A stretch of DNA of 64,000 nucleotides, from sequence record PP777464.1. One strand, given 5' to 3'. Positions within the stretch are counted from its first letter, which is position 1; each line of letters begins with the position of its first letter. Of the stretch, positions 1 to 35,012 are shown piece by piece. Below the pieces are notes generated by a model that saw only the letters and a program-made list of their open reading frames with translations, was not told the origin of the DNA and did no database searches. The position numbers and the translations under genes are program-made.

Positions 1-2
1 TC

Positions 3-407
3 ATGACTACTACTAATCAAGCTCGGTCCATCGCCAACGATAAAAATCATGCTGCAATGGTCGCTGGTTACATTGAAGCTATGCAATTCAGTACTGTACA
101 CAATGAGAACGGCGATTACCTGGAAGATTATGAGTTATCTGATGAAGCACGTCAAGCGGCGGTGATTGCATGTTCTCGCTTCATTGAGAAACACGGTAAT
201 GATCTGGAAGTAGTTCGCGGTATGTTTATTGATTACGGTTATGAGCAAGCTGGTCATGATCTGTTCCTTACCCGCGAAGGTCACGGAACTGGTTTTTGGG
301 ATCGTGGTTTAGGTCACTATGGCGATGTATTCACGAAGTACTGCGAAGAAATCAACGTTTGCGATCCCTATGTAGGCGATGATAATCTAATCTATATGGG
401 CGAATAA
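3..407 (+). CDS. Conserved phage early protein, acidic, with GHDxxLTRxGHGxGFWDR motif; function unknown
   Basis: 134-aa ORF with AGHDLFLTREGHGTGFWDRG, a motif I recall from other phage hypothetical proteins; upstream context cut by window edge. Confidence 0.7.
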   Translation: MTTTNQARSIANDKNHAAMVAGYIEAMQFSTVHNENGDYLEDYELSDEARQAAVIACSRFIEKHGNDLEVVRGMFIDYGYEQAGHDLFLTREGHGTGFWDRGLGHYGDVFTKYCEEINVCDPYVGDDNLIYMGE

Positions 408-413
408 AAGTAT

Positions 414-441
414 TTGACAAAGTATATCAGTACTGTATAAT
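414..441 (+). promoter_or_regulatory. Early sigma70 promoter
   Basis: TTGACA 414-419, 16-bp spacer containing CAGTACTG, TATAAT 436-441; leader hairpin GGGGAGA-actat-TCTCCCC 454-472. Confidence 0.85.
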
Positions 442-496
442 AGTTTACATCAAGGGGAGAACTATTCTCCCCACACCAATAAAAGGAAACAAAATT

Positions 497-769
497 ATGT
501 CCAGCTACTCCGCTACTATGATCATTAAAGATATGAACGGTAATCCTACTTCTGCTGGTGGATCATTTGGAAATATTAACTTAGATGGGCGGTTATCCAT
601 GCAATCAGCCATCGATACAGCGAAAGAAGTTTTTAAGAATGAATGTACTGTTAGTAAGCTGGATTATATGGGATTCGCTATCGAGAAAACTACTCGTTTT
701 GTGAACTACAAAAATCCACTGATGATTGATACTAACCTGAAAGCTAACGAAGTGGGGTACTTATTATGA
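497..769 (+). CDS. Hypothetical early protein
   Basis: 90 aa, AAGGA SD, directly behind promoter 414. Confidence 0.8.
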   Translation: MSSYSATMIIKDMNGNPTSAGGSFGNINLDGRLSMQSAIDTAKEVFKNECTVSKLDYMGFAIEKTTRFVNYKNPLMIDTNLKANEVGYLL

Positions 770-957
770 CAGTAGAAGAAGTTAAAAAAGTACTGGCAGT
801 ACTACGATATCATAATCATTGCAAGGTGAAGAATGATCCTGATTATCTTGATTCATCCCTGGAGGAAGACACCTTGAACGCTATAAGCCATATGCAGACA
901 TTAGCAAAGCGTATGACTGAAAAGAACATGCCGGACTATATCGGAAATAAAATTTAA
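766..957 (+). CDS. Hypothetical early protein
   Basis: 63 aa, ATGA overlap with upstream stop. Confidence 0.7.
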   Translation: MTVEEVKKVLAVLRYHNHCKVKNDPDYLDSSLEEDTLNAISHMQTLAKRMTEKNMPDYIGNKI

Positions 958-964
958 AAAGTAC

Positions 965-992
965 TTGCATTGTAGTTAGATTAACGTATAAT
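965..992 (+). promoter_or_regulatory. Early sigma70 promoter
   Basis: A-tract, AGTACT 960-965, TTGCAT-16-TATAAT; leader hairpin 1005-1026. Confidence 0.85.
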
Positions 993-1044
993 GTTTTATA
1001 TCGAGAGGGGGAAATGGTTTCCCCTCAAGTCCAGGAGATACACC

Positions 1045-1308
1045 ATGAACACTATCGAAATCACTATCAATGCACACGTATACGACAACGTAGTACTGCA
1101 AACTACTATGACCGCCAATGATACCAGTACTTTGCGGAATACTGTTATTAGTGCCGTATGTGCCGCTATCGGTGATGTCGCCCTGGAAAATGCAAAACAC
1201 GTAAACGATGGTTTCACTATGTGCAAACGTGATAACGCAAAACATATCATCGTGGAAGGTTACGGCGGTGTAGAATTTAATGTTTATATGAAAAAAGTAC
1301 TTGCATAA
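1045..1308 (+). CDS. Hypothetical early protein
   Basis: ORF 991-1308; start moved to ATG 1045 (AGGAG SD; upstream part is promoter/hairpin). Confidence 0.8.
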   Translation: MNTIEITINAHVYDNVVLQTTMTANDTSTLRNTVISAVCAAIGDVALENAKHVNDGFTMCKRDNAKHIIVEGYGGVEFNVYMKKVLA

Positions 1309-1328
1309 TAACTAAAACAAAGTATAAT
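1301..1328 (+). promoter_or_regulatory. Early sigma70 promoter
   Basis: AAAAAAGTAC-TTGCAT-16-TATAAT; hairpin GGGGGAG-atatc-CTCCCCC 1339-1357. Confidence 0.85.
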
Positions 1329-1375
1329 GTTTTGCATAGGGGGAGATATCCTCCCCCACTAAAAGGAGTAATAAA

Positions 1376-1600
1376 ATGGCTAACTTTGATGAACTGATGC
1401 GGGAAGTAGCTAACCTGGCAGAAGAGAAGAAATCATTCGATTCTATCTATAACACCGCTCACCGTGATTCAGTACTGGCATGTAACCAGGATCAAAAAGA
1501 TGAACTAATCGCCACCTATCATGAAGCATGGAAGTACTACCGACAATGGGAGAAAGAAGAAAGTGAGTCTACCATTGACGGCCTCAATAATCTAATCTAA
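1376..1600 (+). CDS. Hypothetical early protein, helical
   Basis: 74 aa, AAGGAG SD. Confidence 0.8.
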   Translation: MANFDELMREVANLAEEKKSFDSIYNTAHRDSVLACNQDQKDELIATYHEAWKYYRQWEKEESESTIDGLNNLI

Positions 1601-1619
1601 AAGTTTTATTTCAGTACTA

Positions 1620-1648
1620 TTGACATAGCTTGATAGTACTGATGTAAT
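1620..1648 (+). promoter_or_regulatory. Probable early sigma70 promoter
   Basis: TTGACA 1620-1625, TGTAAT 1643-1648, AGTACT upstream and in spacer. Confidence 0.6.
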
Positions 1649-1676
1649 AACTTTACTAACTACAAGGGGAAACATA

Positions 1677-1934
1677 ATGGATCAGTTCACACAATATCGG
1701 GTAAATCCACAAGCTATGGCCTACGTAGAAGACCATAAAACGTTACCAGTACTGCAACCAGTTAAAGGCCATATCTATCGTGCAATGTCGTGGTGTACGG
1801 CCCAGGATGGCTATAAAACCGTAGCCGTGGGTATGTATTGCGGTGATGGTGAATGGTTTGATCCAAATAATCCGGTAGCCATTGACAGTACTGAAAAAAT
1901 GAAATGGGCCGACTACATCGAAGATATTTCATAA
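1677..1934 (+). CDS. Hypothetical early protein
   Basis: 85 aa, AAGGGG SD. Confidence 0.8.
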   Translation: MDQFTQYRVNPQAMAYVEDHKTLPVLQPVKGHIYRAMSWCTAQDGYKTVAVGMYCGDGEWFDPNNPVAIDSTEKMKWADYIEDIS

Positions 1935-1941
1935 AAACTAT

Positions 1942-1969
1942 TTGACAGTACTAACCAATAATGTATAAT
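1942..1969 (+). promoter_or_regulatory. Early sigma70 promoter
   Basis: TTGACA-16-TATAAT, AGTACT overlapping -35; hairpin GCGGGGGAA-tag-TTCTCCCGC 1982-2002. Confidence 0.85.
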
Positions 1970-2024
1970 GTTTTACATAGAGCGGGGGAATAGTTCTCCC
2001 GCCAATAGTTTGGAGTAAAACATT

Positions 2025-2225
2025 ATGTCTATCGCTATCGCCCTGGTTGAAGTACTGAAAGAAGCTAAAGCCAACCAGATCGACGTAAAGATCCAGGAAC
2101 TACAAAACGGCTTAATCGGCTGTACTTGTACCGCTGGTGGAGCGGCAGACTATCGAGAACACGAATCACTCGAATCACTGGTTCGGTATCTTACCATGAT
2201 CGTTGATGATTGGAGAATCATCTAA
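2025..2225 (+). CDS. Hypothetical early protein
   Basis: 66 aa, GGAG SD. Confidence 0.8.
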   Translation: MSIAIALVEVLKEAKANQIDVKIQELQNGLIGCTCTAGGAADYREHESLESLVRYLTMIVDDWRII

Positions 2226-2240
2226 CAAAAAAGAATAAAA

Positions 2241-2268
2241 AAAGGGATTGACTCCGGTCAGTCCCTTT
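2241..2268 (+). terminator. Hairpin terminator overlapping a promoter (TTGACT 2248-2253, TATTAT 2271-2276)
   Basis: AAAGGGATTGAC-tccg-GTCAGTCCCTTT 12-bp stem after a stop codon. Confidence 0.7.
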
Positions 2269-2388
2269 GCTATTATATACGCATAGACAAAAACTAGCCC
2301 ACAGGGTGCATAGGTGTATCCAAAATATATAGTTAATAACGGTGAGTAACTATCTGCTGGTGGAACTAAAACTATTAATAAAAAAGTA

Positions 2389-2417
2389 TTGACAAAGTAT
2401 ATCAGTACTGCAATAAT
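2389..2417 (+). promoter_or_regulatory. Early sigma70 promoter
   Basis: TTGACAAAGTATATCAGTACTG identical to promoter 414; AATAAT -10. Confidence 0.75.
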
Positions 2418-2470
2418 GTATCTCGTAGGGCGGCAATGGTGCGACGGCCCACAAAGTTAGGAGATTCACC

Positions 2471-2803
2471 ATGAGTACTTCAATCGCTATCGTTAAAGCT
2501 TTCATCCGTACTAATGTTTCCTCTGTATTCATCGACGGCCTCGACCGTAACGTAGAATACTCAATCATTATCGCACAAACGGCAAACGGTTCTCGGTACA
2601 TCCTGAATGATAGTGAAGCAAATCACTACTACTTCACTAAAGCCACTGGCTTTAAACGCATCGATGCTGATGTAGTATACGCTAAGATGAATAAGCTGGT
2701 AGATAAGATTAACGCTAAAGGTACTATAGATTTACAGTACTGGACCGAAACCGATCCAGAGTATGGATCTCACCGCTACCTGAATCCAGGTATCAAAATG
2801 TAA
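2471..2803 (+). CDS. Hypothetical early protein
   Basis: 110 aa, AGGAG SD. Confidence 0.85.
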   Translation: MSTSIAIVKAFIRTNVSSVFIDGLDRNVEYSIIIAQTANGSRYILNDSEANHYYFTKATGFKRIDADVVYAKMNKLVDKINAKGTIDLQYWTETDPEYGSHRYLNPGIKM

Positions 2804-2810
2804 AAAGTAC

Positions 2811-2838
2811 TTGCATAGTACTTAGATTCATGTATAAT
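2811..2838 (+). promoter_or_regulatory. Early sigma70 promoter
   Basis: TTGCAT-16-TATAAT, with AGTACT at 2806 and 2817; hairpin GAGGGGGAA..TTCTCCCTC 2851-2872. Confidence 0.85.
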
Positions 2839-2892
2839 GTTTTACATAGAGAGGGGGAAATGGTTCTCCCTCCTAAATTAAGGAGTTTTATC

Positions 2893-3294
2893 ATGACCTT
2901 CTCAATCACTTCCTTCGCTGACGTTTTAGTACTGGCCCGGACTTTTGGTAAAGATGCACTGGAGTACGCTGTAAGTAATGGCACTATCCAACCGGAACAG
3001 TGCCGCATCATTGGAAACTGCAAACGTTGGGCGGTTTCCAATACTATTGCACTGGAAAACTTCCACGATGGCAACAATGAATATTCTGTTGATGTAGTAT
3101 TCGAAGCCGTTGATCTCGGCGGTATCTATAATACTAACCTGAATGATGTGCGTATCGTTCGCACTGGGTTCGGTGCTTATGATGTATCTATTCGTGAAGC
3201 TATGAACACCGGATACATTAGCAAGGACTTACTTGCTCACATCATGCAGCTGTGTACGGAACGTAACGAAGCACGCACTATCTTAGGACTGTAA
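2893..3294 (+). CDS. Hypothetical early protein
   Basis: ORF 2830-3294; start moved to ATG 2893 behind AAGGAG. Confidence 0.8.
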   Translation: MTFSITSFADVLVLARTFGKDALEYAVSNGTIQPEQCRIIGNCKRWAVSNTIALENFHDGNNEYSVDVVFEAVDLGGIYNTNLNDVRIVRTGFGAYDVSIREAMNTGYISKDLLAHIMQLCTERNEARTILGL

Positions 3295-3318
3295 GCGTTA
3301 CACATCACCAAACATCAT

Positions 3319-3338
3319 AGGCCGCCTTGTAGCGGCCT
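3319..3338 (+). terminator. Intergenic GC hairpin (terminator or processing site)
   Basis: AGGCCGC-cttgta-GCGGCCT, weak U tract. Confidence 0.5.
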
Positions 3339-3362
3339 TAACTATATCAGGAGTACATACAC

Positions 3363-3572
3363 ATGATCTATACAGTATACAACGTTCTAGGCACTATTGC
3401 AGGCGTACATGATAACGTCGATGGTGCTATGCGTACAGTACTGCAACAGGTTCCACTAAAGCCTAAGACCATTAAGCAGATGACAGCACGACTAACCAGG
3501 GCGACGGCTGGCGTGGAAGTATGGCAGGACTATGGGGATACACAGATAATCGTAAGCGTAACGAAGGATTAA
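3363..3572 (+). CDS. Hypothetical early protein
   Basis: 69 aa, AGGAG SD. Confidence 0.75.
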   Translation: MIYTVYNVLGTIAGVHDNVDGAMRTVLQQVPLKPKTIKQMTARLTRATAGVEVWQDYGDTQIIVSVTKD

Positions 3573-3596
3573 TGCGTAAAAGGATTTAGTACTGAA

Positions 3597-3668
3597 TCAT
3601 AAAAAAGTCAAGGCATTTTTAAACTTCAGCGTTAAAAAAATGCATAGGTAATCCCTTGACTTTTATGA
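3597..3668. repeat. Nested imperfect inverted repeat
   Basis: TCATAAAAAAGTCAAGG / CCTTGACTTTTATGA enclosing GCATTTTTAAAC / GTTAAAAAAATGC. Confidence 0.65.
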
Positions 3669-3763
3669 ATAAAAAGGGATTGGACTATGGCAAAATGCGT
3701 AGGGGGCTAAAGGGCGGGTAACCTTAGCGACTTCGATAAAGGGGTATTACTTATAAAATGTTA

Positions 3764-3791
3764 TTGACTTTTTATATGAATCGTATATTAT
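3764..3791 (+). promoter_or_regulatory. Promoter for F1 array
   Basis: TTGACT 3764-3769, 16 bp, TATTAT 3786-3791; GGAG SD before 3822. Confidence 0.6.
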
Positions 3792-3821
3792 TGGATTGAT
3801 ATTATTTTTAATGGAGTCCCT

Positions 3822-4019
3822 ATGCGTATTTTAACTCAAGAAGAGCACAACCACACACTCATATCCAACATGGCATATATCCTACATATGTCACATATCC
3901 GTGGTATTGCATATAAGCGTGAATTGGTTATGAAACTTTTCATAGGAACTAACTATCAAGAAAAGTATATCGAACTATACTTACAAGAATTACGAAGGGA
4001 CATAAAAGGTAGACTATGA
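3822..4019 (+). CDS. F1 paralog 1
   Basis: FIGTNYQEKY. Confidence 0.88.
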   Translation: MRILTQEEHNHTLISNMAYILHMSHIRGIAYKRELVMKLFIGTNYQEKYIELYLQELRRDIKGRL

Positions 4020-4216
4020 AAATGCGTATTTTAAATAAAGAAGATTATCAAGAACTGTTACGTAAAAACATGGTAAAGATTTATAACACAGACACAAACT
4101 TAGAACGAATTGAGTTATACCTTTTGATTACATTGGGTACAAGCTATCAGGGAAGATGGGTGATTCAATATATGGATGCATTGAAAAATGAAATATTGTC
4201 CACGAGGAAACAATGA
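4016..4216 (+). CDS. F1 paralog 2
   Basis: LGTSYQGRW. Confidence 0.88.
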   Translation: MKMRILNKEDYQELLRKNMVKIYNTDTNLERIELYLLITLGTSYQGRWVIQYMDALKNEILSTRKQ

Positions 4217-4422
4217 AAACTATAACACGAACCCAATCATTCGGTCTTATCTTGAAATACATGGACTTAATGTTTGATATCAGCAAAGACCTTTCTAAAA
4301 CTGAAATCCAAGTTGCAAGAGCAGAGATCCGCATGTTGGCTGTACTGAACACAAACCATCAGGAAGAGTATGTTGACGATTGGATTCATTTTTTAATAGA
4401 AGATATTAAGAGTAAACTATGA
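4213..4422 (+). CDS. F1 paralog 3
   Basis: LNTNHQEEY. Confidence 0.88.
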   Translation: MKTITRTQSFGLILKYMDLMFDISKDLSKTEIQVARAEIRMLAVLNTNHQEEYVDDWIHFLIEDIKSKL

Positions 4423-4631
4423 TTTTTTTAACACCAGAAGAATATAAGATACGTTTTGTTTCTGTCCAGAATAAAATCTTAATTATATACAATTCAAATG
4501 CAGACCTTAACTTATCAAGGGTATTAGAAAAAGATTTACTTATGGGTGCATTTTTGGATACAGACTTTCAGGTGTATTATGTAGGGGAATACTTAATTGC
4601 ACTCCAGAATTACATTAAGAGTAAACTATGA
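4419..4631 (+). CDS. F1 paralog 4
   Basis: LDTDFQVYY. Confidence 0.88.
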   Translation: MIFLTPEEYKIRFVSVQNKILIIYNSNADLNLSRVLEKDLLMGAFLDTDFQVYYVGEYLIALQNYIKSKL

Positions 4632-4840
4632 ATAGCATTAACTCAAATCTATATACCGAACGCGTCGCTGCAAGACAACTTGAAATTCTCATAGTATATG
4701 AAGAGACTGAGGATTTGAACTTAGCATTAGTATTGGAAAATGATATACTATTGGGTGCATTCCTCGGCACAGACTATCAGGAGCACTTCTTGAATGAGTA
4801 TATAATTGCACTCCAGAAATACATTAAGAGCAAACTATGA
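4628..4840 (+). CDS. F1 paralog 5
   Basis: LGTDYQEHF; close sister of paralog 4. Confidence 0.88.
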   Translation: MNSINSNLYTERVAARQLEILIVYEETEDLNLALVLENDILLGAFLGTDYQEHFLNEYIIALQKYIKSKL

Positions 4841-5055
4841 AACATTTAAGTAATTCCGAGAAGAATAAAATTATCATTGCTGCAATAAACAAATATTTTA
4901 CACTTCCTCACACAGAAGGTTTATGTGTAAGGGAACACAGGATAAACACCACCGATATACGCATGATGGCTGTACTGGGGACGAACTTTCAGGAAGAGTA
5001 TGTTGTTGCACACATAGTTGCCCTCACTGATTTAATAAGGGACAAATGCAAATGA
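4837..5055 (+). CDS. F1 paralog 6
   Basis: LGTNFQEEY. Confidence 0.88.
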   Translation: MKHLSNSEKNKIIIAAINKYFTLPHTEGLCVREHRINTTDIRMMAVLGTNFQEEYVVAHIVALTDLIRDKCK

Positions 5056-5270
5056 AAGACATAAACACCCAAGAATATCTTAAACGATTAGAACAAGGGA
5101 AGAACTTTAGACTTCAAGTTTACGATGATGAATCACTAACATCCAATGAAAAGTATGTTATACTAACAGACTCAACATTAATACCATTTGTAGGAACAAA
5201 CTATCAGGAGGTTATGGTTGACAACCACATCACGGCCTTAAAATGTCATGTCAGGGATTTAGGTAAATGA
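5046..5270 (+). CDS. F1 paralog 7
   Basis: VGTNYQEVM. Confidence 0.88.
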   Translation: MQMKDINTQEYLKRLEQGKNFRLQVYDDESLTSNEKYVILTDSTLIPFVGTNYQEVMVDNHITALKCHVRDLGK

Positions 5271-5524
5271 AACACTTAACACTAGATGAATATGAAACTA
5301 TAGTCCGTAAACTAACCCCTATAGCAAGGATAGTCTACGATGACCCCAGCCTTACATGGAACCAAATGCGAGCTAAAGTTAATGAGCTATGGTTGCTGTA
5401 CTTTATGGGGACTCAATATCAAGATAAGTTTTGCACAGAATATGTCGAACAATTAATGAATGTTATACAGGATAAACTAGATGATTATTGGCTCACAAAA
5501 CATGAAGACTTTATCAGGAGTTGA
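5267..5524 (+). CDS. F1 paralog 8
   Basis: MGTQYQDKF. Confidence 0.88.
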   Translation: MKHLTLDEYETIVRKLTPIARIVYDDPSLTWNQMRAKVNELWLLYFMGTQYQDKFCTEYVEQLMNVIQDKLDDYWLTKHEDFIRS

Positions 5525-5753
5525 GTATCAAACTGCCCTATTCTCTTTAATCCATGCCCTTAGAAAAAACAATGCCTTACATGGTGCACCTGAAGTGGAT
5601 GTTATCAACGGTGAACTTTATCTTATGAAATTCATTGGAACAAACTATCAAGATCTGTTCATTCAACGATACTTATCAGCATTAAGAAACCAAATCCAAT
5701 ATAAAACCCAGAGAGCCAAAAAAGAATGGAATAAAAAATGCGACACAGACTAA
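5502..5753 (+). CDS. F1 paralog 9
   Basis: IGTNYQDLF; start moved from 5481 to match family N-terminus MKTLSGVEY. Confidence 0.85.
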   Translation: MKTLSGVEYQTALFSLIHALRKNNALHGAPEVDVINGELYLMKFIGTNYQDLFIQRYLSALRNQIQYKTQRAKKEWNKKCDTD

Positions 5754-5989
5754 ATCACAAAATGTATTGTAAACTATTACAGACACTGGCACAGAAACAC
5801 TATGACACGGTATCTGGAATATTACCCTATGATATCATGCGTTTACTTCACTGTGAGGCCGAGATGCTTGTACTGATGACAGGCACAGATAAAAACGCAA
5901 TTGCCAAATCAATAGATATGTTCATCGAAGCACAATGTCAACACATTAGAACCGAGATATGGAGGCGAGAGAATGATAACACTAAATGA
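5738..5989 (+). CDS. F1 paralog 10 (divergent)
   Basis: MTGTDKNAI, motif degenerate. Confidence 0.75.
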   Translation: MRHRLNHKMYCKLLQTLAQKHYDTVSGILPYDIMRLLHCEAEMLVLMTGTDKNAIAKSIDMFIEAQCQHIRTEIWRRENDNTK

Positions 5990-6188
5990 GTATCAGTATC
6001 ATTGGAGGTTACAAGCTATAAGAAGGAAAGTTGTTAGTATTTCTTTAGACAAGTCTATTGCACAAGAGGACAAATGTGTTATAATAGCTGAAATGAAGTT
6101 GGGTGCATTCGTAGGAACAAACTATCAAAACATCTACACTGACGTATTGTTAAGTGCCTTACGTAACAAGGTGATATCAAAAGAATGA
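5973..6188 (+). CDS. F1 paralog 11
   Basis: VGTNYQNIY. Confidence 0.88.
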   Translation: MITLNEYQYHWRLQAIRRKVVSISLDKSIAQEDKCVIIAEMKLGAFVGTNYQNIYTDVLLSALRNKVISKE

Positions 6189-6403
6189 GAAAATTACAAG
6201 GCTTTGAATACATCAGACTCCTGAAAACATGTGCCAACAGAAGAGTAAAGATTCAATCTGATAAGAGCATCCCTGCCAACCTAAAACATGCATTGATAGC
6301 TGAACTCTATGCAGGGGCACTCATAGGGACAAACTATCAACAAATGTATATAGACATGTGGGTTGATGCATTAGTCAAGGAGATCCAAAGTAAATGCAAA
6401 TGA
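6185..6403 (+). CDS. F1 paralog 12
   Basis: IGTNYQQMY. Confidence 0.88.
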   Translation: MRKLQGFEYIRLLKTCANRRVKIQSDKSIPANLKHALIAELYAGALIGTNYQQMYIDMWVDALVKEIQSKCK

Positions 6404-6642
6404 TTAATTTAAGTAAATCTGAATATAAAGAACGCCAAGCAAAAATCTTACCTAAACTTAATGAAATCCATTTCGGTGAAGTAAACAAACACGAAAATAA
6501 GATGATTATGAAGCGTGAGACAAAGCTATGTGCATTCTTAGGAACTAACTATCAGGAGTATTATGTAGAGGAATATATAATTACACTTAAGAAATACATT
6601 GGAAGTAAACTAAGTAAACGTGCGAGAAATGCAAATGATTAA
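6394..6642 (+). CDS. F1 paralog 13
   Basis: LGTNYQEYY. Confidence 0.88.
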   Translation: MQMINLSKSEYKERQAKILPKLNEIHFGEVNKHENKMIMKRETKLCAFLGTNYQEYYVEEYIITLKKYIGSKLSKRARNAND

Positions 6643-6847
6643 TTTAAGTAAAGATGAATATTATGAACGTCTTGCAAAAACTTATCCAGCACGTAACGCC
6701 GTTTATAATAGTAACATTATTGAACGCTCAAAGAAGTTGATTGTAGTAAATGAGATTAAGATGCTTTCAGTCTTAGGAACAAACTATCAAGAGAATGCTG
6801 TACTGTTGTTAATTGATGCCCTCAAGAGAGAGATACAAAGTAAATGA
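6629..6847 (+). CDS. F1 paralog 14
   Basis: LGTNYQENA; MQM start at 6629. Confidence 0.88.
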   Translation: MQMINLSKDEYYERLAKTYPARNAVYNSNIIERSKKLIVVNEIKMLSVLGTNYQENAVLLLIDALKREIQSK

Positions 6848-7092
6848 TTAATTTATCTTTCCATGAATATCAAAAACGTTTAAATGCATCAAGGGATATA
6901 AGGATTCAAATCTTCAATAACAAAAGATTGAAACCTGACACCAGAAGAATCAAAATAATAGAAGCAGAGTTATGCAACTTCCTGGGGACGAACCATCAGG
7001 AAGGTAAGATAAAAAACTATCTTAGAGAACTCATGATTTGTATCGAAAATAAATGTGAGGTTGATGAACATGCAAATGATCAATTTAAGTAA
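6844..7092 (+). CDS. F1 paralog 15
   Basis: LGTNHQEGK. Confidence 0.88.
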   Translation: MINLSFHEYQKRLNASRDIRIQIFNNKRLKPDTRRIKIIEAELCNFLGTNHQEGKIKNYLRELMICIENKCEVDEHANDQFK

Positions 7093-7333
7093 AGATGAAT
7101 ATACCGAGCGTATGACAAAAATTACGCACAAACGTAATACAATCTATCACAACCCAGAAATTCAACACAGTAAGAAAATGATTATGATGCGTGAGTTAAA
7201 GATGGGTGTATTCTTAGGAACAAACTATCAAGAGCCAGAAGTAAATCGATTAATTGCTGAGTTACTATTGGAAATCAAAGGTAAGCTGTACTTTTATCAA
7301 ATGACCCAACCACTGAGGTGTACTGATCGATGA
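7070..7333 (+). CDS. F1 paralog 16
   Basis: LGTNYQEPE; MQM start at 7070 behind GAGG. Confidence 0.88.
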   Translation: MQMINLSKDEYTERMTKITHKRNTIYHNPEIQHSKKMIMMRELKMGVFLGTNYQEPEVNRLIAELLLEIKGKLYFYQMTQPLRCTDR

Positions 7334-7581
7334 ATGCGATGAATATTGTGAATAACATCAGATTAGCAGAAAGATTTGATAGAATTGGGGAAGCACTGAG
7401 AAGATACGATAAAGAATATGGTCATTTGAGCTTTTCTATAGAAAAGAGATATGAACTTGAAGCAGAGTTTAAAATGCAGAGTCTCTTAGGCACACAGTAT
7501 CAAAACCAATATATTCAAACTTGGATTGATTGTTTAATCCAGACAATTTATGTAAGAAACATTAAATGCAAAATGAAATGA
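7330..7581 (+). CDS. F1 paralog 17
   Basis: LGTQYQNQY. Confidence 0.88.
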   Translation: MNAMNIVNNIRLAERFDRIGEALRRYDKEYGHLSFSIEKRYELEAEFKMQSLLGTQYQNQYIQTWIDCLIQTIYVRNIKCKMK

Positions 7582-7802
7582 TATACTTAACACATGATGA
7601 GTTAACAGAAAGACTAGATAAATCCAAAAGACTTACAAATCAACTTCCTCACAACCCAAACCAAACCCCAGCGGAAAGGAGTGCAGAAGTTTTATTCCAA
7701 AGATTACCATACCTTCTTGGAACTGATAGGCAAGAGTATCATGTTGAACGTATAATTAAATATCTCAAAATTACTATTATGGAAAAAGTAAATGCAAAAT
7801 GA
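7566..7802 (+). CDS. F1 paralog 18
   Basis: LGTDRQEYH. Confidence 0.88.
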   Translation: MQNEMIYLTHDELTERLDKSKRLTNQLPHNPNQTPAERSAEVLFQRLPYLLGTDRQEYHVERIIKYLKITIMEKVNAK

Positions 7803-8049
7803 AATGAAATACTTAACAGACGATGAGTTAAAAGAACGATTAATTAAATCCAGAAAACTTACAAATCAACTTCCAAACGACACAAACAAGTCACATGCCG
7901 AAAGGAGTGCAGAAGTTTTATACATTCAACTCCTGTACTTTCTTGGAACTGACAGACAAGAGTATTACATTGAAAGTATGCTTCGATATCTTAAATTCTC
8001 TATAAAGGAAAAGGTACATGCTCAAGAATTTAAAAATCCTAACAGTTAA
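7792..8049 (+). CDS. F1 paralog 19
   Basis: LGTDRQEYY; close sister of paralog 18. Confidence 0.88.
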   Translation: MQNEMKYLTDDELKERLIKSRKLTNQLPNDTNKSHAERSAEVLYIQLLYFLGTDRQEYYIESMLRYLKFSIKEKVHAQEFKNPNS

Positions 8050-8260
8050 TGAATATCATAAGATTGTAATGAAAACTAATAGTGCAATATCTAAAAAATC
8101 AAACCCAAAGTACATACTGGAACACACATTCGAAGAACGTCAATTAGCTTTAGTTGAAGCAAAACTTCTTGCACTCCTAGGAACAAACTATCAGGAAGAA
8201 TACATCAGAAAACTAATATACCTTTTAACTAAACACATCAGGAAAAGAAAAAAAGCATGA
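8018..8260 (+). CDS. F1 paralog 20
   Basis: LGTNYQEEY. Confidence 0.88.
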   Translation: MLKNLKILTVNEYHKIVMKTNSAISKKSNPKYILEHTFEERQLALVEAKLLALLGTNYQEEYIRKLIYLLTKHIRKRKKA

Positions 8261-8487
8261 AGCACTTGACAGATGATGAACATGGGCTTATAGTAATGGA
8301 TGTAATCAACATCGAATACAAAAAGTTGATACGCTACCGTTGTTATGAAGATAAGCAACTCGTTCTAGCAGAACAGAAGTTGTTTCGACTCTTAAACACA
8401 AACTTCCAAGCACAATACGAAGAATCGTATTTGTACCTACTGTCGAGGAAAGCAAAAAGAGATTATGAAAATTTTAAGCCACAGTGA
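8257..8487 (+). CDS. F1 paralog 21
   Basis: LNTNFQAQY. Confidence 0.88.
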   Translation: MKHLTDDEHGLIVMDVINIEYKKLIRYRCYEDKQLVLAEQKLFRLLNTNFQAQYEESYLYLLSRKAKRDYENFKPQ

Positions 8488-8680
8488 ACAAACAGAATTG
8501 TTAATCTTTAATACAAGTAAATTCTTAAACATAACATTGTCTGATATAGATGAGGATGAAAAAGAGTTACTTAGAGCAGATTTAAGAGTTCTTTTATATG
8601 TTGGAACTAACTTCCAAGAGCAATTCGTTGAGGACTACATCGATGAACTTAAAGAATCTGTACTGAGAACATGCAAATGA
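8465..8680 (+). CDS. F1 paralog 22
   Basis: VGTNFQEQF. Confidence 0.88.
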   Translation: MKILSHSEQTELLIFNTSKFLNITLSDIDEDEKELLRADLRVLLYVGTNFQEQFVEDYIDELKESVLRTCK

Positions 8681-8913
8681 AAATCCTTTCACCAAGTGAA
8701 TACCACGAACTATTAAGTAGTTTAATTCTAAAATTGTATATAGCAAAGACCACAGATTTACCTGATGAAGAAAAAAATATTCTAATGAGTGAAATCTATG
8801 TTAATTCTACCCTAGGGACTAACTATCAAGAATGTAATATTAATGATTACATCAAAGAACTAAAAAGGTTTATCCAATGCAAATGCGAATCATTACCGAC
8901 GAAGAATACCTAA
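8671..8913 (+). CDS. F1 paralog 23
   Basis: LGTNYQECN. Confidence 0.88.
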   Translation: MQMKILSPSEYHELLSSLILKLYIAKTTDLPDEEKNILMSEIYVNSTLGTNYQECNINDYIKELKRFIQCKCESLPTKNT

Positions 8914-9128
8914 CAATCATAAATGGACTGTTTTCGAAGTTATTTGCCATTAACACATCAAAACTTCCAGATACTGATAAAATTATTAAGTTAAATGAAA
9001 TCTACGTTCAAGCTACTCTAGGAACAAACTATCAAGAAGCCAATGTGTATAATTACATTAATACACTCAAAAGGGTAATAAAATTAAAATGCACAGACAG
9101 CACAAACAGCCAATACACAAACCCCTAG
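8877..9128 (+). CDS. F1 paralog 24
   Basis: LGTNYQEAN; sister of paralog 23. Confidence 0.88.
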   Translation: MQMRIITDEEYLTIINGLFSKLFAINTSKLPDTDKIIKLNEIYVQATLGTNYQEANVYNYINTLKRVIKLKCTDSTNSQYTNP

Positions 9129-9328
9129 GAACAGCAGAATACATTGAACTAATGGCTGCAAACTTCTCATCCTTTAAGAAACTGATGCAAGAATCAAATA
9201 ATGATTTAGAATATCATATCAAAAGTTCAGATTTAAGATTACTACTCACTCTAGGAACAGACAGTCAGTACAAATTCGTACAGGAGCATATTAGAGCACT
9301 TTTAAATGGCATCAGGGATAAACTATGA
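9089..9328 (+). CDS. F1 paralog 25
   Basis: LGTDSQYKF. Confidence 0.85.
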   Translation: MHRQHKQPIHKPLGTAEYIELMAANFSSFKKLMQESNNDLEYHIKSSDLRLLLTLGTDSQYKFVQEHIRALLNGIRDKL

Positions 9329-9540
9329 AGGAAATATCAAATCAAGAGTACTTGGCACTATTCAGGAAGAATAATCACAAATATATGGCACTTGATTCAA
9401 GAACTGATATAAGTGAACTTCAGAAAAATCTTTTGCGTTCAGAGATGATAGTACTGACACTCTTAGGAACACAGCATCAAGAGAGAACTGTTAATTCACA
9501 CATAGAGATTCTTATGCAGATAGTACAGGAAAAGATATGA
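9325..9540 (+). CDS. F1 paralog 26
   Basis: LGTQHQERT. Confidence 0.88.
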   Translation: MKEISNQEYLALFRKNNHKYMALDSRTDISELQKNLLRSEMIVLTLLGTQHQERTVNSHIEILMQIVQEKI

Positions 9541-9758
9541 GAATCATAACACAACAAGATATGCTTAAGTTCGCAAGGGTTCATGCATCTGAATTTGATG
9601 CTATATTATCAAAAAGTTACAACAACCCTTATACACAAGATGTACATTACAGTGAATTATGGATGTATATACTTTTAGGTACAGATCATCAAGAGCAAGC
9701 AGTACAGAAGTATTTGAGAGCTTTACGTGATGCTACAGCTAATGGAGTACATGTTTAA
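9537..9758 (+). CDS. F1 paralog 27
   Basis: LGTDHQEQA. Confidence 0.88.
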   Translation: MRIITQQDMLKFARVHASEFDAILSKSYNNPYTQDVHYSELWMYILLGTDHQEQAVQKYLRALRDATANGVHV

Positions 9759-9759
9759 T

Positions 9760-10011
9760 ATGAAAGTACTGACAGAACTAGAAATGTATCATAGATTTAA
9801 TAAGTACTATCATTTACTTAAGCCTATACAGAGAATTAAATGTCCATTTGAAGAGAAACAGGTTTTAATCTATGAGCACAAGTTCTTTGTATCATTAGGT
9901 ACAGATCAACAAGAGTACTATTTGACGTTGTACTTGATTACATTAATAGATTTCATTCACTATAAAACCACACAATCTAAACAAGCTAATAAAGAGAAAT
10001 ATGAAAACTAA
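9760..10011 (+). CDS. F1 paralog 28
   Basis: LGTDQQEYY; start probably 9760 (MKVLTELE), ORF open from 9727. Confidence 0.85.
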   Translation: MKVLTELEMYHRFNKYYHLLKPIQRIKCPFEEKQVLIYEHKFFVSLGTDQQEYYLTLYLITLIDFIHYKTTQSKQANKEKYEN

Positions 10012-10339
10012 TATAAAACTCAAGGTATATAAATCATTTGCAAGTACATACATCAAATGCCATACATGTAACTCTGTAATGGACTACAAAGGTAAGCCAT
10101 TTGCACTTACTTATGATAATACAAGAGGTTTTTATATATCTTTTGCTGATTACAAATATAACATATACGAACACATTGACATTGAAGATTTAAGTACTTT
10201 ATCTGAAGAGGAATACTTTCAAGAATCATTAGTATGGGATTTGGAGTTTCCTATGCCATTAGTACATAAGATGATAGTACTAATAAAAGAAACTAAACCT
10301 GTACCTAATGGTTATGAAGAACACATTATTGAGTATTAA
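10001..10339 (+). CDS. F2 protein (EExxFQxSL family)
   Basis: LSEEEYFQESLVWD. Confidence 0.88.
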   Translation: MKTNIKLKVYKSFASTYIKCHTCNSVMDYKGKPFALTYDNTRGFYISFADYKYNIYEHIDIEDLSTLSEEEYFQESLVWDLEFPMPLVHKMIVLIKETKPVPNGYEEHIIEY

Positions 10340-10353
10340 TATATAAGGTAACT

Positions 10354-10695
10354 ATGAAAACTAATATACAACTCAATGTATACAGTTCAGAAGAACATAC
10401 ATATATCAAATGCAGTCTATGTAAAGATGTAATGGACTACAAGGGTAAGCCATTCACAATTACTTATGATTCTTATGTTAATGATTTATATATATCATTT
10501 CTTAATTACGAAAAGAAAATATACAAGCACGTTGATATTAAAGATTTAAGTACTTTATCTGAAGAAGAATACTTTCAAGAATCATTAGTATGGGATTTAG
10601 AATTTCCTATGCCATTAGTACATAAAATGGTAGTCCTAATGAAAGAAACTAAACCGGAGTTTAATGGTTATGAAGAACACATCGTTGAGTACTAA
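10354..10695 (+). CDS. F2 protein, recent duplicate of 10001
   Basis: LSEEEYFQESLVWD; C-terminal third nearly identical to 10001. Confidence 0.88.
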   Translation: MKTNIQLNVYSSEEHTYIKCSLCKDVMDYKGKPFTITYDSYVNDLYISFLNYEKKIYKHVDIKDLSTLSEEEYFQESLVWDLEFPMPLVHKMVVLMKETKPEFNGYEEHIVEY

Positions 10696-10698
10696 ACA

Positions 10699-10923
10699 AT
10701 GAAAATATTATCATACAAAGATTACCGCAAGCTTCGCGGTATTTTGCGACCAGAAATTCAAAGAATTAATTCTCTTCCTATATCTAATGCAGAATGTTCA
10801 GTACTGAAAGATGAGTTAATATTAAAACACACAGTAGGAACTAACTATCAAGCTGATAGTGTTCGATATCTAATTTGGGGATTAATATGCATAGTAAAGG
10901 AAAAACAAGCTCAAGTACTGTGA
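10699..10923 (+). CDS. F1 paralog (dispersed)
   Basis: VGTNYQADS. Confidence 0.85.
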   Translation: MKILSYKDYRKLRGILRPEIQRINSLPISNAECSVLKDELILKHTVGTNYQADSVRYLIWGLICIVKEKQAQVL

Positions 10924-11249
10924 CAATCGAAGTGAATTCTATTAATGCTGGTAATGCAGTAGATAAGTTCTTTATTGCTCAAGGGTACAGGAAAGATATT
11001 CATCAATATTGTTCAGTATATGGGGAGTACAATAGTACTGAAGATATAATTTATTGGTCAACACATCAAGATTATCTAACTAAAATTGGCATTCCAGATG
11101 TTAGTACTTTATCTGAAGAAGAATACTTTCAGTACAGCTTAGTACATGATTTACCTATACCTTTAGGGTTAATCAAGGGTATACAGGAAGAGGTTCATAA
11201 GCTTAAATCCATGAGTAAAGGTACTTTCATTAGAACAGTGCAATACTAG
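10875..11249 (+). CDS. F2 protein
   Basis: LSEEEYFQYSLVHD; start uncertain. Confidence 0.82.
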   Translation: MGINMHSKGKTSSSTVTIEVNSINAGNAVDKFFIAQGYRKDIHQYCSVYGEYNSTEDIIYWSTHQDYLTKIGIPDVSTLSEEEYFQYSLVHDLPIPLGLIKGIQEEVHKLKSMSKGTFIRTVQY

Positions 11250-11250
11250 C

Positions 11251-11279
11251 TTGACAGTACTTTTCATTACTGATATAGT
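11251..11279 (+). promoter_or_regulatory. sigma70 promoter
   Basis: TTGACA-17-TATAGT with TG extension; AGTACT overlapping -35. Confidence 0.7.
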
Positions 11280-11308
11280 ACCTGTACGTTAATCATGGGG
11301 TAAAAATT

Positions 11309-11877: not shown

Positions 11878-11886
11878 GAGAAGAAT

Positions 11887-12226: not shown

Positions 12227-12478
12227 ATGTACAAAAAAATAAACCGTTATTTGTATGCATCAAAGTACAGGGATTTTTGTTTACAAGGGGGAGATGACGA
12301 TTTTGCTCTGAGGTTATCGGAATTTAATATGTTATTTTATCTTGGTACAAAAGAACAAGAAGATACAGTACAGAAATTTCTCAATCATCTTGTACAAAAA
12401 ATTAATATGCAAATTTTGATGCTTAAGTTACAGAATGAGATAAATGAATATGAATCCAGAAATAGTTCAGGATCTTAA
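12227..12478 (+). CDS. F1 paralog (dispersed)
   Basis: LGTKEQEDT; AAGGAG SD. Confidence 0.8.
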   Translation: MYKKINRYLYASKYRDFCLQGGDDDFALRLSEFNMLFYLGTKEQEDTVQKFLNHLVQKINMQILMLKLQNEINEYESRNSSGS

Positions 12479-21047: not shown

Positions 21048-21048
21048 T

Positions 21049-25123: not shown

Positions 25124-25319
25124 TCGAATTGAATACATGAGAACTGTGAGTGCAGTGTGGGACATATGGTTCACTACTAAACCAAAAATGGATTACCATG
25201 ACTTTAAGCTATTGTTCTTCGTTGGCTCTAACAAACAGGATGTTGCAATGAAGGGTTATATTCAGCACTTACAGGAACTAATCCAGAAGAGAATATATGA
25301 AAATAATAGACCAAGATGA
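25092..25319 (+). CDS. F1 paralog (dispersed, divergent)
   Basis: VGSNKQDVA. Confidence 0.7.
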   Translation: MISMKYSKTFNRIEYMRTVSAVWDIWFTTKPKMDYHDFKLLFFVGSNKQDVAMKGYIQHLQELIQKRIYENNRPR

Positions 25320-35001: not shown

Positions 35002-35012
35002 CGGAGAACTAC

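What the first reader, a model, noticed from the sequence alone, without database searches (positions are those of the whole stretch)
3822..10011. 28 consecutive small paralogs (F1) sharing one motif: a tandem library of variant helical proteins
Seen: 28 back-to-back ORFs of ~65-90 aa share M(K/R)xL(T/S)xxEY, a highly variable middle, then (E)xx(L/M)xx(F/L)(L/V/I)GT[NDQ][YFH]QExx(V/I)xx(Y/W)(I/L)xxL...K. They follow one promoter (3764) and are nearly all joined by stop/start overlaps. Pairwise similarity is low apart from sister pairs (4/5, 13/14/16, 18/19, 23/24). All copies are intact, so they appear maintained and diversified rather than decaying. I do not recognise the family. Inference: a constant docking motif plus a variable surface suggests a repertoire of inhibitors or decoys against polymorphic host defence proteins, or variable subunits for a common partner, expressed early in roughly equal amounts.
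Basis: partly seen in the sequence, partly recalled or inferred. Interest (0 to 1): 0.88.

Follow-up and report, generated by a model that had tools for sequence, protein, structure and literature searches.

The report
Tandem small-protein family in jumbo phage
A giant E. coli phage carries 28 back-to-back genes for variants of one tiny three-helix protein of unknown function just inside its terminal repeat; each variant is kept by selection across related phages, so this looks like an uncharacterised set of early, probably host-directed, proteins.

Summary
The window is Escherichia phage fEgEco12 (Asteriusvirus, 375 kb). Window 3822-10011 holds 28 contiguous + strand ORFs of one family. A 29th copy lies at 10699 and three divergent members further downstream; there are none elsewhere in the genome. 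The array starts 98 bp after the end of the 20,993-bp left direct terminal repeat, behind a conserved sigma70-like promoter.

The family is phrog_4148 (unknown function). Pfam, NCBIfam, PADLOC and PDB give no match. It occurs only in Asteriusvirus phages and a few uncultured relatives. AlphaFold2 gives a very confident three-helix bundle (pLDDT 96) with no informative structural neighbour.

Arrays in eight phages are syntenic with 23-29 copies. Each position has its own ortholog, with occasional whole-cassette gain or loss. Ortholog dN/dS is about 0.35, so this is not decay, and no region shows positive selection.

The conserved "motif" is mostly the fold's skeleton (hydrophobic heptads plus two helix caps at one pole). 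Nearly all exposed positions vary. The proteins are absent from the phAPEC6 virion proteome.

Best reading, by inference only: an early, polycistronic set of intracellular binders for host takeover or counter-defence. Expression, targets and any docking role remain untested.

The parts
1..3724 (+). Last 3.7 kb of the left 20,993-bp direct terminal repeat (DTR). It holds small genes, most with their own near-consensus sigma70-type promoter and several with a GC-rich 5' hairpin.
   Evidence: Window 3000-3724 is identical to the last 725 bases of the record. DTR length comes from PMC13070987. Promoters and hairpins.
3690..3745 (.). Conserved GC-rich block spanning the DTR boundary (3724/3725); probably a genome-terminus recognition site.
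   Evidence: The intergenic alignment is 96% identical over 8 phages. The DTR ends of fEgEco12 and vB_Ec-M-J coincide within 1 nt in that alignment.
3764..3791 (+). Sigma70-like promoter candidate, TTGACT-16-TATTAT, in front of the array.
   Evidence: largely conserved in 8 phages. This is a consensus match only.
3813..3816 (+). GGAG Shine-Dalgarno-like sequence, 5 nt before the first ATG.
3822..4019 (+). Family copy 1 (g057)
4016..4216 (+). Copy 2 (g058)
4213..4422 (+). Copy 3
4419..4631 (+). Copy 4 (sister of copy 5, 51% identity)
4628..4840 (+). Copy 5
4837..5055 (+). Copy 6
5046..5270 (+). Copy 7; this cassette is absent from Ecwhy_1, SP27 and vB_Ec-M-J.
   Evidence: Contigs in public runs skip 5064 to 5285.
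5267..5524 (+). Copy 8
5481..5753 (+). Copy 9 (the conserved Met is at 5502)
5738..5989 (+). Copy 10, the most divergent motif in the array (TGTDKN)
5973..6188 (+). Copy 11
6185..6403 (+). Copy 12
6394..6642 (+). Copy 13, the copy that was modelled. Among the eight phages compared, an ortholog occurs only in EC.P1; tblastn also finds near-identical copies in WPEC3 and CMSTMSU.
6620..6847 (+). Copy 14 (conserved Met at 6635)
6844..7092 (+). Copy 15
7055..7333 (+). Copy 16 (conserved Met at 7076)
7330..7581 (+). Copy 17
   Evidence: Contigs skip 7324 to 7563.
7566..7802 (+). Copy 18 (sister of copy 19, 64% aa identity). This is the only pair within the array still detectable as a DNA tandem repeat.
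7792..8049 (+). Copy 19
8018..8260 (+). Copy 20
8257..8487 (+). Copy 21. Its Leu-Thr codons (TTG ACA) form a promoter-like site at 8266-8294.
8465..8680 (+). Copy 22
8671..8913 (+). Copy 23 (absent in SP27 and 121Q)
8877..9128 (+). Copy 24
9089..9328 (+). Copy 25
9325..9540 (+). Copy 26
9537..9758 (+). Copy 27
9727..10011 (+). Copy 28 (conserved Met at 9760)
10001..10695 (+). Two copies of a second paralog family (112-113 aa, signature E-E-Y-F-Q-E-S-L), continuing directly from the array with no intervening strong promoter.
10699..10923 (+). Copy 29 of the first family, set among second-family genes.
   Evidence: HMM E 2.7e-20; phrog_4148 E 3.6e-10.
10875..11249 (+). Third adjacent copy of the second family; last gene before the next strong promoter.
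11251..11279 (+). Next strong promoter-like site (TTGACA-17-TATAGT with TG), of the type found in front of the DTR genes. It marks the likely end of the block.
12227..12478 (+). Divergent outlying member (matches the C-terminal half of the profile).
   Evidence: HMM E 9e-7.
25092..25488 (+). Two divergent outlying members (25092-25319 and 25297-25488).
   Evidence: HMM E 5.5e-5 and 2.8e-13.

Best explanation
The array is an old, selectively maintained multigene family of small soluble three-helix-bundle proteins (phrog_4148). It is specific to Asteriusvirus jumbo phages and a few uncultured relatives.

It grew by tandem duplication of a unit of roughly 210-230 bp. It still gains and loses whole cassettes in register, but each position now has its own conserved ortholog, so each copy has its own job.

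The genes lie in the first 100 bp of unique DNA inside the left terminal repeat. They are most likely transcribed by host RNA polymerase from a sigma70-type promoter as one long early message, and translated by coupling across overlapping stop and start codons.

The shared residues build the scaffold: the hydrophobic core and two helix caps that meet at one pole. Almost every exposed position differs between copies, and net charge runs from -7 to +9. I therefore read the family as a repertoire of intracellular binders on one scaffold. Each copy would engage a different host (or phage) macromolecule during takeover or counter-defence, and each is individually dispensable.

Shown: the family, its position, fold prediction, synteny, purifying selection, cassette turnover, and absence from the virion proteome. 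Inferred: early transcription, translational coupling, binder function, host targets.
For: - Reality and extent of the family.
- Position 98 bp after the DTR end, with the same layout in vB_Ec-M-J.
- Promoter type: a sigma70-like site at 3764, near-consensus sites before the DTR genes, and no strong + strand terminator within the block.
- By analogy, the DTR genes of the related jumbo phage PA5oct are early and highly transcribed (PMC7318152).
- Translation signals: 15 of 27 junctions are ATGA overlaps; a Shine-Dalgarno-like sequence of 4 nt or more precedes 14 of 29 starts, against 15% at random positions.
- Fold: pLDDT 96.1, three helices. Independently predicted BFVD models of paralogs superpose with TM up to 0.81/0.93.
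- Conserved columns are core heptads plus caps; surface columns have entropy above 3 bits; pI ranges 4.4-9.9.
- Conservation is at the protein level: synonymous codons vary at motif columns and dS in the motif is 0.22.
- Synteny, with 23-29 copies and an ortholog at 70% aa or better for each position.
- dN/dS is 0.34-0.43 against phages divergent enough to measure, like the downstream accessory genes (0.34-0.42).
- Whole-cassette presence or absence between phages and in public contigs.
- Not among the 62 virion proteins of phAPEC6, where the array is gp467c-gp489c.
- Standalone proteins only: 84 representatives, of which only a 5,271-aa protein with a weak partial match falls outside 52-121 aa, so there are no domain fusions.
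Against: - No expression data. The only raw RNA-seq run placed zero reads (no test), and metatranscriptome contigs may derive from DNA.
- No homology or structural similarity to any known anti-defence, regulatory or host-takeover protein.
- No positive-selection signal of the kind expected in an arms race. Copies are conserved across phages isolated on different E. coli and Salmonella hosts.
- No partner is known. The homodimer prediction gave no answer.
- The promoter is only a consensus match, and such sites are not enriched in the region.
- It is not known which genome end enters the cell first.
Confidence: 0.45

Rival explanations
1. Adapter library for one common partner. The conserved pole (the N-terminal L-T-x-x-E-Y plus the G-T-N-Y-Q-E turn) docks every copy onto the same host or phage machine, for example RNA polymerase, a protease or a nuclease. 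The variable surfaces then select different substrates or sites.
For: In the model the two conserved polar motifs are brought together by a beta-bridge between residue 4 and the invariant Thr. T49 is invariant and Q52 is present in 28 of 29 copies, more conserved than a helix cap alone would need. E40 and K70 are also conserved polar positions. The motif has the lowest dN/dS, 0.19.
Against: The same residues fit textbook fold elements: capping box, hydrophobic staple, Gly C-cap. No candidate partner has been identified, and no co-varying neighbour gene is present. The second family next door has no known fold.
Confidence: 0.2
2. Packaged internal proteins, like the T4 internal proteins. A conserved N-terminal targeting peptide would load a variable set of proteins into the capsid, to be injected with the DNA against host restriction.
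For: There is a conserved N-terminal decapeptide with a variable body. The locus is hyperplastic, with cassette turnover.
Against: No member (gp467c-gp489c) is among the 62 virion proteins of phAPEC6, although a 4.7-kDa protein was detected there. In the model the N-terminal motif is an integral part of the fold. The genes sit in an early-type block, not with the head genes.
Confidence: 0.05
3. Functionless by-product: selfish or neutral duplicated filler DNA, or decaying duplicates.
For: Individual cassettes are dispensable. One copy each in 121Q and PBECO4 carries a stop. dN/dS is looser than for the DTR genes.
Against: 28 of 28 frames are open, against 3.4 expected. dN/dS is about 0.35 with dS up to 0.35 across the genus. 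Each position is conserved as its own ortholog. The fold prediction is very confident. The family also persists as arrays in very divergent uncultured phages.
Confidence: 0.03
4. The repeated unit works at the nucleic-acid level, as an array of protein-binding sites or RNA elements, and the ORFs are secondary.
For: The hexamer AAC-TAT inside the motif is fixed beyond what the protein requires: Asn is AAC in 17 of 17 copies (p = 4e-7), and genus-wide the count is 124 to 6. The array sits next to the genome terminus.
Against: Other motif codons vary freely. The copies are too diverged for DNA-level repeat detection, apart from one pair. Rfam finds nothing. The substitution pattern is that of coding sequence.
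Confidence: 0.03

Closest known systems
Terminal multigene families of large eukaryotic DNA viruses (African swine fever virus MGF110/360/505; poxvirus terminal gene families). This comparison rests on my own knowledge.
   Same: Tandem paralogs next to the terminal repeats, copy number differing between isolates by whole-gene gain and loss, members individually dispensable, and linked to host interaction.
   Different: The host domain and the proteins are unrelated, and there is no homology. Here the proteins are only about 70 aa and the array is essentially gap-free and co-oriented. No host-range or immune role has been shown for this family.
Host-takeover modules of small early genes in or beside terminal redundancies: Bacillus phage SPO1 gp37-60, T5 pre-early region, Twort-like 'Tre' genes (own knowledge); PA5oct DTR early genes (PMC7318152).
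   Same: Many genes under 100 aa at a genome end behind sigma70-type promoters, mostly of unknown function, and thought to act on the host early in infection.
   Different: Those modules are collections of unrelated genes, not 28-32 paralogs on one scaffold. Early timing is measured there and only inferred here.
T4 tifA tandem amplification, a phage 'genomic accordion' (bioRxiv 10.1101/2022.04.14.488369, seen).
   Same: Tandem multiplication of a small counter-defence gene in a phage genome through recombination.
   Different: The accordion makes recent, near-identical copies for dosage. Here the youngest pair has dS of about 0.5-0.6 and most pairs are about 25% identical, so this is ancient diversification, not dosage.
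Colicin/pyocin immunity proteins such as Im7 and Im9 (own knowledge).
   Same: Proteins of about 85 aa, all helical. A conserved patch plus variable helices gives partner-specific inhibition. These proteins also occur as arrays of orphan copies in bacteria.
   Different: No copy matches Pfam Colicin_Pyocin even at E up to 1, and no Im structure appears among the fold matches. This family has three long helices rather than four short ones.
T4 internal proteins IPI-III and their hyperplastic loci (own knowledge).
   Same: A conserved N-terminal decapeptide on otherwise variable small proteins; a locus that varies between related phages; an anti-restriction role for one member.
   Different: This family is not found in virions, and its N-terminal motif is part of the fold rather than a cleaved signal.

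Membership tests
PHROG phrog_4148 (unknown function) | Full-length match to the family profile | tested here: met
   All 9 copies tested match over about 70 of 74 profile positions, E 3.6e-10 to 3.7e-25.
Any curated Pfam, NCBIfam or PADLOC family | A profile match shared by several members, or one above the curated cut-off | tested here: not met
   All 29 copies were scanned at E up to 1. Every hit is confined to one member and lies below the cut-off.
Any protein with a solved structure | Sequence-profile or fold similarity above background | tested here: not met
   Profile against PDB: best E 0.19. Foldseek: E above 1. VIA-align: best Z 6.7, below the tool's stated background for helical models. 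ESM Atlas: nothing specific.
Colicin/pyocin immunity proteins (PF01320) | Match to the Colicin_Pyocin profile, or the four-helix Im fold | tested here: not met
   No such hit in any of the 29 members. No Im chain among the fold matches.
T4-type internal (capsid-packaged) proteins | Presence in purified virions | tested here: not met
   In phAPEC6 the array is gp467c-gp489c. None of these is in the 62-protein virion list (PMC7247149). Caveat: small proteins are harder to detect.
T4-type internal (capsid-packaged) proteins | N-terminal targeting peptide removed by the prohead protease | not testable with these tools
   This needs N-terminal sequencing or mass spectrometry of the mature protein.
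Helix-turn-helix DNA-binding proteins | Short helix, tight turn and recognition helix geometry, or a match to an HTH family | tested here: not met
   The helices are 20, 15 and 28 residues long and there is no HTH profile hit. Only weak TetR-like rows appear (TM 0.42-0.52).
Viral terminal multigene family (as a kind, not by homology) | Tandem paralogs adjacent to the terminal repeat | tested here: met
Viral terminal multigene family (as a kind, not by homology) | Copy-number and content variation between isolates | tested here: met
   23-29 contiguous copies; cassettes 7, 13, 23, x1 and others are present or absent.
Viral terminal multigene family (as a kind, not by homology) | Role in host range or evasion of host defence | not testable with these tools
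   This needs deletion mutants and plating on host or defence panels.
Known anti-defence proteins (Acr, Ocr, Tad, Gad and others) | Homology to a characterised inhibitor | tested here: inconclusive
   No dedicated anti-defence profile library was available. Solved inhibitor structures in the PDB gave no match. The T4 Vs.4 row is at noise level (E 6.5).

The most novel reading that the evidence does not exclude
Asteriusvirus phages carry a natural 'binder library'. One ultra-stable three-helix scaffold has been duplicated about 30 times and resurfaced, so that each copy neutralises or redirects a different host factor or defence protein. That would make it the largest single-scaffold host-interaction multigene family known in a bacteriophage, and a prokaryotic-virus counterpart of the terminal multigene families of large eukaryotic DNA viruses.
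Probability: 0.3. Interest if true: 0.8.

Novelty: new variant of a known kind. Interest (0 to 1): 0.6.

Why it matters
Jumbo phages are being proposed for therapy while about 80% of their genes are unknown. In this phage 44 kb next to the terminal repeat is entirely 'hypothetical', and this family alone makes up about 6 kb of it.

A family of around 30 diverged copies of one confidently folded mini-scaffold, each kept by selection, is a compact and tractable system. The proteins are about 70 aa, soluble and easy to express one by one.

If the copies bind distinct host proteins, they would give a panel of new inhibitors of E. coli functions or defence systems. They would also give a natural example of how a virus builds specificity on a fixed scaffold, and a phage parallel to the multigene families that set host range in large eukaryotic viruses.

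If instead they share one partner, they would reveal a new adapter logic. Either way the array is a marker locus whose cassette content distinguishes Asteriusvirus strains.

Tried and rejected
I searched the GenBank record through its locus handle instead.
- ESM Atlas feature search: no usable hit.
- RNA evidence: the raw RNA-seq run X22 placed 0 reads, so it is no test. Metatranscriptome contigs cover parts of the array but may derive from DNA.
- Complex prediction homodimer of copy 13: 'no answer' (score 0.01). This is not evidence for or against self-association.
- Weak Pfam DUF7237 hit of copy 13 (E 0.05): not shared by any other copy, so dropped.
- The idea that the second family's 'LSEEEY' is homologous to this family's N-terminal motif: the match is limited to three copies, and that family's signature is different (E-x-F-Q-E-S-L). 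Dropped.
- Fold searches for the second family, to get a functional hint from the neighbourhood: best Z 5.0 and Foldseek E above 0.04 with TM about 0.2. Nothing usable.
- Literature searches for a description of this family or of tandem small-protein arrays in Asteriusvirus or Rak2-like phages: none found. The fEgEco12, UE-S1, Sharanji and phAPEC6 papers do not mention it; the CBB paper only notes 22 paralogous ORFs in that different genus.
- Test of independent expansion in the divergent metagenomic arrays: uninformative, since all comparisons are about 33% identical.

Full report
**Identity of the window.** Megablast places window 3000-12000 at 100% identity on Escherichia phage fEgEco12 (PP777464.1, 374,733 bp). 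This is a lytic jumbo myovirus of the genus Asteriusvirus. Window position equals record position minus 17,269. The depositors annotate every gene of the finding (g057-g084) as a hypothetical protein. Their paper does not mention the array.

**Checking the observation.**
- The ORF listing returns exactly the 28 + strand ORFs described, 65-94 aa each, from 3822 to 10011.
- They align into one family with the stated N-terminal M-(K/R)-x-L-(T/S)-x-x-E-Y and central G-T-(N/D)-x-Q-E motifs.
- The region contains 28 stop-free runs of at least 60 aa on the + strand, against a mean of 3.4 (max 8) in shuffles.
- A profile built from the copies finds a 29th full copy at 10699-10923 and three divergent members at 12227, 25092 and 25297.
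- A six-frame scan of the whole 375-kb record gives 32 matches, all inside this window.
- At the conserved Met, 15 of 27 internal junctions are ATGA overlaps. Most of the rest overlap by 8-40 nt, and three starts sit 1-2 nt after the upstream stop.
- Rfam finds nothing on either strand.
- At the DNA level, only copies 18/19 within the array still register as a tandem repeat.

**Position in the genome.** The fEgEco12 paper reports 20,993-bp direct terminal repeats, confirmed by restriction mapping (PMC13070987). I confirmed the boundary: window 3000-3724 is identical to the last 725 bases of the record, and the identity stops there. The first copy starts at 3822, so the array begins 98 bp into unique DNA.

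vB_Ec-M-J has the same layout, with its annotated repeat ending at 21525 and the first family gene starting at 21624. The 250-bp segment across the boundary is 96% identical in eight phages, and the two mapped repeat ends coincide within 1 nt.

That segment carries a TTGACT-16-TATTAT promoter-like site (3764-3791) and a GGAG 5 nt before the first ATG. Upstream, most of the terminal-repeat genes have their own near-consensus TTGACA-17-TATAAT promoter, several followed by a GC-rich 5' hairpin. Downstream, the next strong promoter of that type is at 11251, immediately after the last gene of the block.

No strong + strand terminator lies within the block. Promoter-like sites as such are not enriched, and one good match lies inside copy 21. 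A single promoter is therefore plausible but unproven.

**What the proteins are.**
- *Sequence libraries.* Pfam, NCBIfam and PADLOC give only scattered single-member chance hits. PHROGs places the family in phrog_4148, of unknown function.
- *Deep profile search.* Against 1.84 billion representative proteins, the profile finds only 84 at E up to 0.001. Apart from one 5,271-aa protein with a weak partial match, all are 52-121 aa, so none is a domain fusion.
- *Distribution.* tblastn finds the family in 34 phage records, all Escherichia or Salmonella Asteriusvirus. The profile finds 33 matches in PBECO4 and 27 in 121Q, but none in the related jumbo phages CBB (Mimasvirus) and fENko-Kae01. In those two phages the DNA just inside the terminal repeat starts directly with 170-210-aa genes.
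- *Uncultured relatives.* Divergent members sit in uncultured phage contigs that share essentially no nucleotide similarity with this phage. They are arrayed there as well, with 15 members in one 4.7-kb contig.
- *Fold.* AlphaFold2 with the 29-copy alignment gives a three-helix bundle at pLDDT 96.1 and pTM 0.81. The helices span residues 8-27, 33-47 and 54-81. A small beta-bridge joins residue 4 to the invariant Thr of the G-T-N motif.
- *Structure searches.* Foldseek and VIA-align against the PDB, and the ESM Atlas, give only generic helical matches. BFVD returns only other Asteriusvirus family members, whose independent models superpose well, with TM up to 0.81/0.93 at 28% identity.

**What is conserved and what varies.** The column statistics show that the conserved positions fall into three groups:
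- the heptad hydrophobic positions of the three helices;
- L4-T5-x-x-E8-Y9, a classical capping box with hydrophobic staple at the start of helix 1 (this reading rests on my own knowledge of helix-capping motifs);
- G48-T49-N50-x-Q52-E53, the turn and N-cap of helix 3, plus E40 and K70.

Nearly every other, presumably exposed, column has entropy above 3 bits. Net charge ranges from -7 to +9 and pI from 4.4 to 9.9. The two polar motifs meet at one pole of the model.

A conserved functional pole is still possible: T49 is invariant and Q52 is present in 28 of 29 copies. That is the basis of the adapter rival.

Conservation is at the protein level. G, T, Q and L columns use several synonymous codons, and dS inside the motif is 0.22. 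One oddity remains. The motif Asn is always AAC and the motif Tyr always TAT (p = 4e-7 and 3e-4 against local usage), and genus-wide the counts are 124 to 6 and 115 to 2. I cannot explain this.

**Evolution.**
- I fetched the locus from seven further phages for comparison and mapped members with the profile.
- Clustering at 70% aa identity or better shows syntenic arrays of 23-29 contiguous copies in which each position has its own ortholog.
- Single cassettes are present or absent, for example 7, 13, 23 and an extra 18/19-like copy 'x1'.
- Copy 13 illustrates this. It is 100% identical in EC.P1 and WPEC3, but has only paralog-level hits in Ecwhy_1 and WPEC5, which are about 97% identical overall.
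- Contigs from public runs show cassette-sized skips of 220, 427 and 238 bases whose ends lie near copy boundaries.
- Adjacent copies are more alike than non-adjacent ones, 30.7% against 24.4%, as expected from tandem duplication.
- Nei-Gojobori dN/dS for orthologs is 0.34-0.43 against phages divergent enough to measure. This equals the downstream accessory genes (0.34-0.42) and is looser than the terminal-repeat genes (0.14-0.24).
- By region, dN/dS is 0.19 for the G-T-N-Y-Q-E block, 0.27 for helix 2, and 0.36-0.48 elsewhere. It never approaches 1.
- The youngest paralog pairs have dS of 0.5-2.0 and dN/dS of 0.26-0.60.
- The array is therefore old and under purifying selection copy by copy. 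It is not a recent dosage 'accordion', and it shows no gene-wide signal of diversifying selection. Pairwise averages cannot exclude a few selected sites.
- 121Q and PBECO4 each have one copy with an in-frame stop, so single copies are dispensable.

**Where the proteins act.** In phAPEC6 the array is gp467c-gp489c. The published virion proteome of 62 proteins contains nothing between gp347 and gp549, although it detected a 4.7-kDa protein (PMC7247149). The family therefore appears non-structural.

A Shine-Dalgarno-like sequence of at least 4 nt precedes 14 of 29 starts, against 15% of random positions. Together with the overlaps, this fits coupled translation.

In the distantly related jumbo phage PA5oct, RNA-seq showed that the terminal-repeat genes are highly transcribed early (PMC7318152). 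That is support by analogy only. My attempt to get direct RNA evidence failed: the raw RNA run placed no reads.

**Surroundings.**
- The block continues with a second paralog family: 15 members in the window, with a variable beta-rich N-terminal half and an E-x-F-Q-E-S-L signature. Three of its copies surround copy 29.
- Its model (pLDDT 81) has no informative structural neighbour.
- By BLAST-level clustering, 32% of coding bases in the window belong to paralog families.
- Everything from g047 to g161, about 44 kb, is annotated as hypothetical. Recognisable DNA-metabolism genes start near g162.

**Interpretation.** What is shown: a real, lineage-specific, ancient tandem family of small, confidently folded, non-virion proteins, each kept by selection, at the inner edge of the left terminal repeat.

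What is inferred: early transcription by host polymerase, and a function as a repertoire of intracellular binders built on one scaffold and aimed at different host or phage macromolecules.

I put 0.45 on that reading. I put 0.2 on the variant in which the conserved pole docks all copies onto one common partner. The remaining explanations (packaged internal proteins, functionless filler, DNA- or RNA-level element) get little weight, and each is contradicted by a test above.

The closest known parallels are analogies, not homologies:
- the terminal multigene families of large eukaryotic DNA viruses;
- the host-takeover modules of small early genes at phage genome ends;
- colicin-type immunity proteins, for the logic of a conserved patch plus variable specificity.

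No paper in the searchable library describes this family.

**Verdict.** Its mechanistic reading (docking motif, anti-defence decoys, equal early expression) is plausible but untested, and the conserved motif is better explained as fold skeleton. I rate this a new variant of a known kind, of moderate to high interest because it is large, clean and experimentally tractable.

Noticed in passing
window 3690-3745: A GC-rich block spans the terminal-repeat boundary and is nearly invariant in 8 phages. The repeat ends of fEgEco12 (mapped by PhageTerm) and vB_Ec-M-J (annotated) coincide within 1 nt in the alignment, so this is probably the terminus recognition or cleavage site.
   Followed up: partly
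window 408-496, 958-1003, 1309-1375, 1601-1676, 1935-2024, 2390-2470: Most of the terminal-repeat genes in the window are preceded by their own near-consensus sigma70 promoter (TTGACA-17-TATAAT type), and several also by a GC-rich hairpin at the predicted 5' end of the mRNA. The array's own promoter lacks such a hairpin.
   Followed up: partly
motif codons of all copies, e.g. window 3957-3962, 6544-6549: Inside G-T-N-Y-Q-E the Asn codon is AAC in 17 of 17 copies and the Tyr codon is TAT in 16 of 16. Genus-wide the counts are 124 to 6 and 115 to 2, against mixed usage elsewhere in the same genes. This is a nucleotide-level constraint (AACTAT) that I could not explain.
   Followed up: partly
window 8266-8294 and 5276-5304: The conserved Leu-Thr codons of copies 21 and 8 (TTG ACA and TTA ACA), with TATAGT 17 nt downstream, form good promoter-like sites inside the array. 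The site in copy 21 is unchanged in all 8 phages compared, apart from one spacer base in PBECO4, but that gene is little diverged anyway. Internal promoters cannot be excluded.
   Followed up: partly
window 10001-12198, 19916-21393, 26631-27318, 28870-29232, 34420-35564, 50077-50766: A second paralog family of 15 members (103-229 aa) has a variable beta-rich N-terminal part and an invariant F-Q within an E-x-F-Q-E-S-L-x-x-D signature (phrog_13866). The AlphaFold2 model has pLDDT 81 and no informative PDB neighbour.
   Followed up: partly
window 13188-39509: There is a long run of back-to-back 100-210-aa genes including several smaller paralog families. In the sister genera (CBB, fENko-Kae01) similar runs of 170-210-aa genes begin immediately after the terminal repeat, where Asteriusvirus has the small-protein array.
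   Followed up: partly
window 5064-5285, 6612-7040, 7324-7563: Contigs from public sequencing runs (a phage-rich sample and a wastewater metatranscriptome) join across these points. This removes one or two whole cassettes, with a few replaced letters at two of the joints. Natural populations therefore carry array-length variants.
   Followed up: partly
L006 (PBECO4 KC295538.1) and L008 (121Q KM507819.1): PBECO4's annotation misses many family genes (patchy calls against 33 profile matches). One PBECO4 copy has an in-frame TGA and one 121Q copy an in-frame TAA. These are either real pseudogenes or sequencing errors in early assemblies.
   Followed up: no
window 19817-19866: A run of 50 N. I left it as it is and did not examine it.
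   Followed up: no
L010 (logan SRR22590157 contig) and L011 (logan SRR34023385 contig): Uncultured phage contigs (GC about 29-30%) carry 15 and 12 divergent family members in arrays, only about 33% identical to any fEgEco12 copy. The family and its tandem organisation are therefore older than the genus Asteriusvirus as sampled by isolates.
   Followed up: partly
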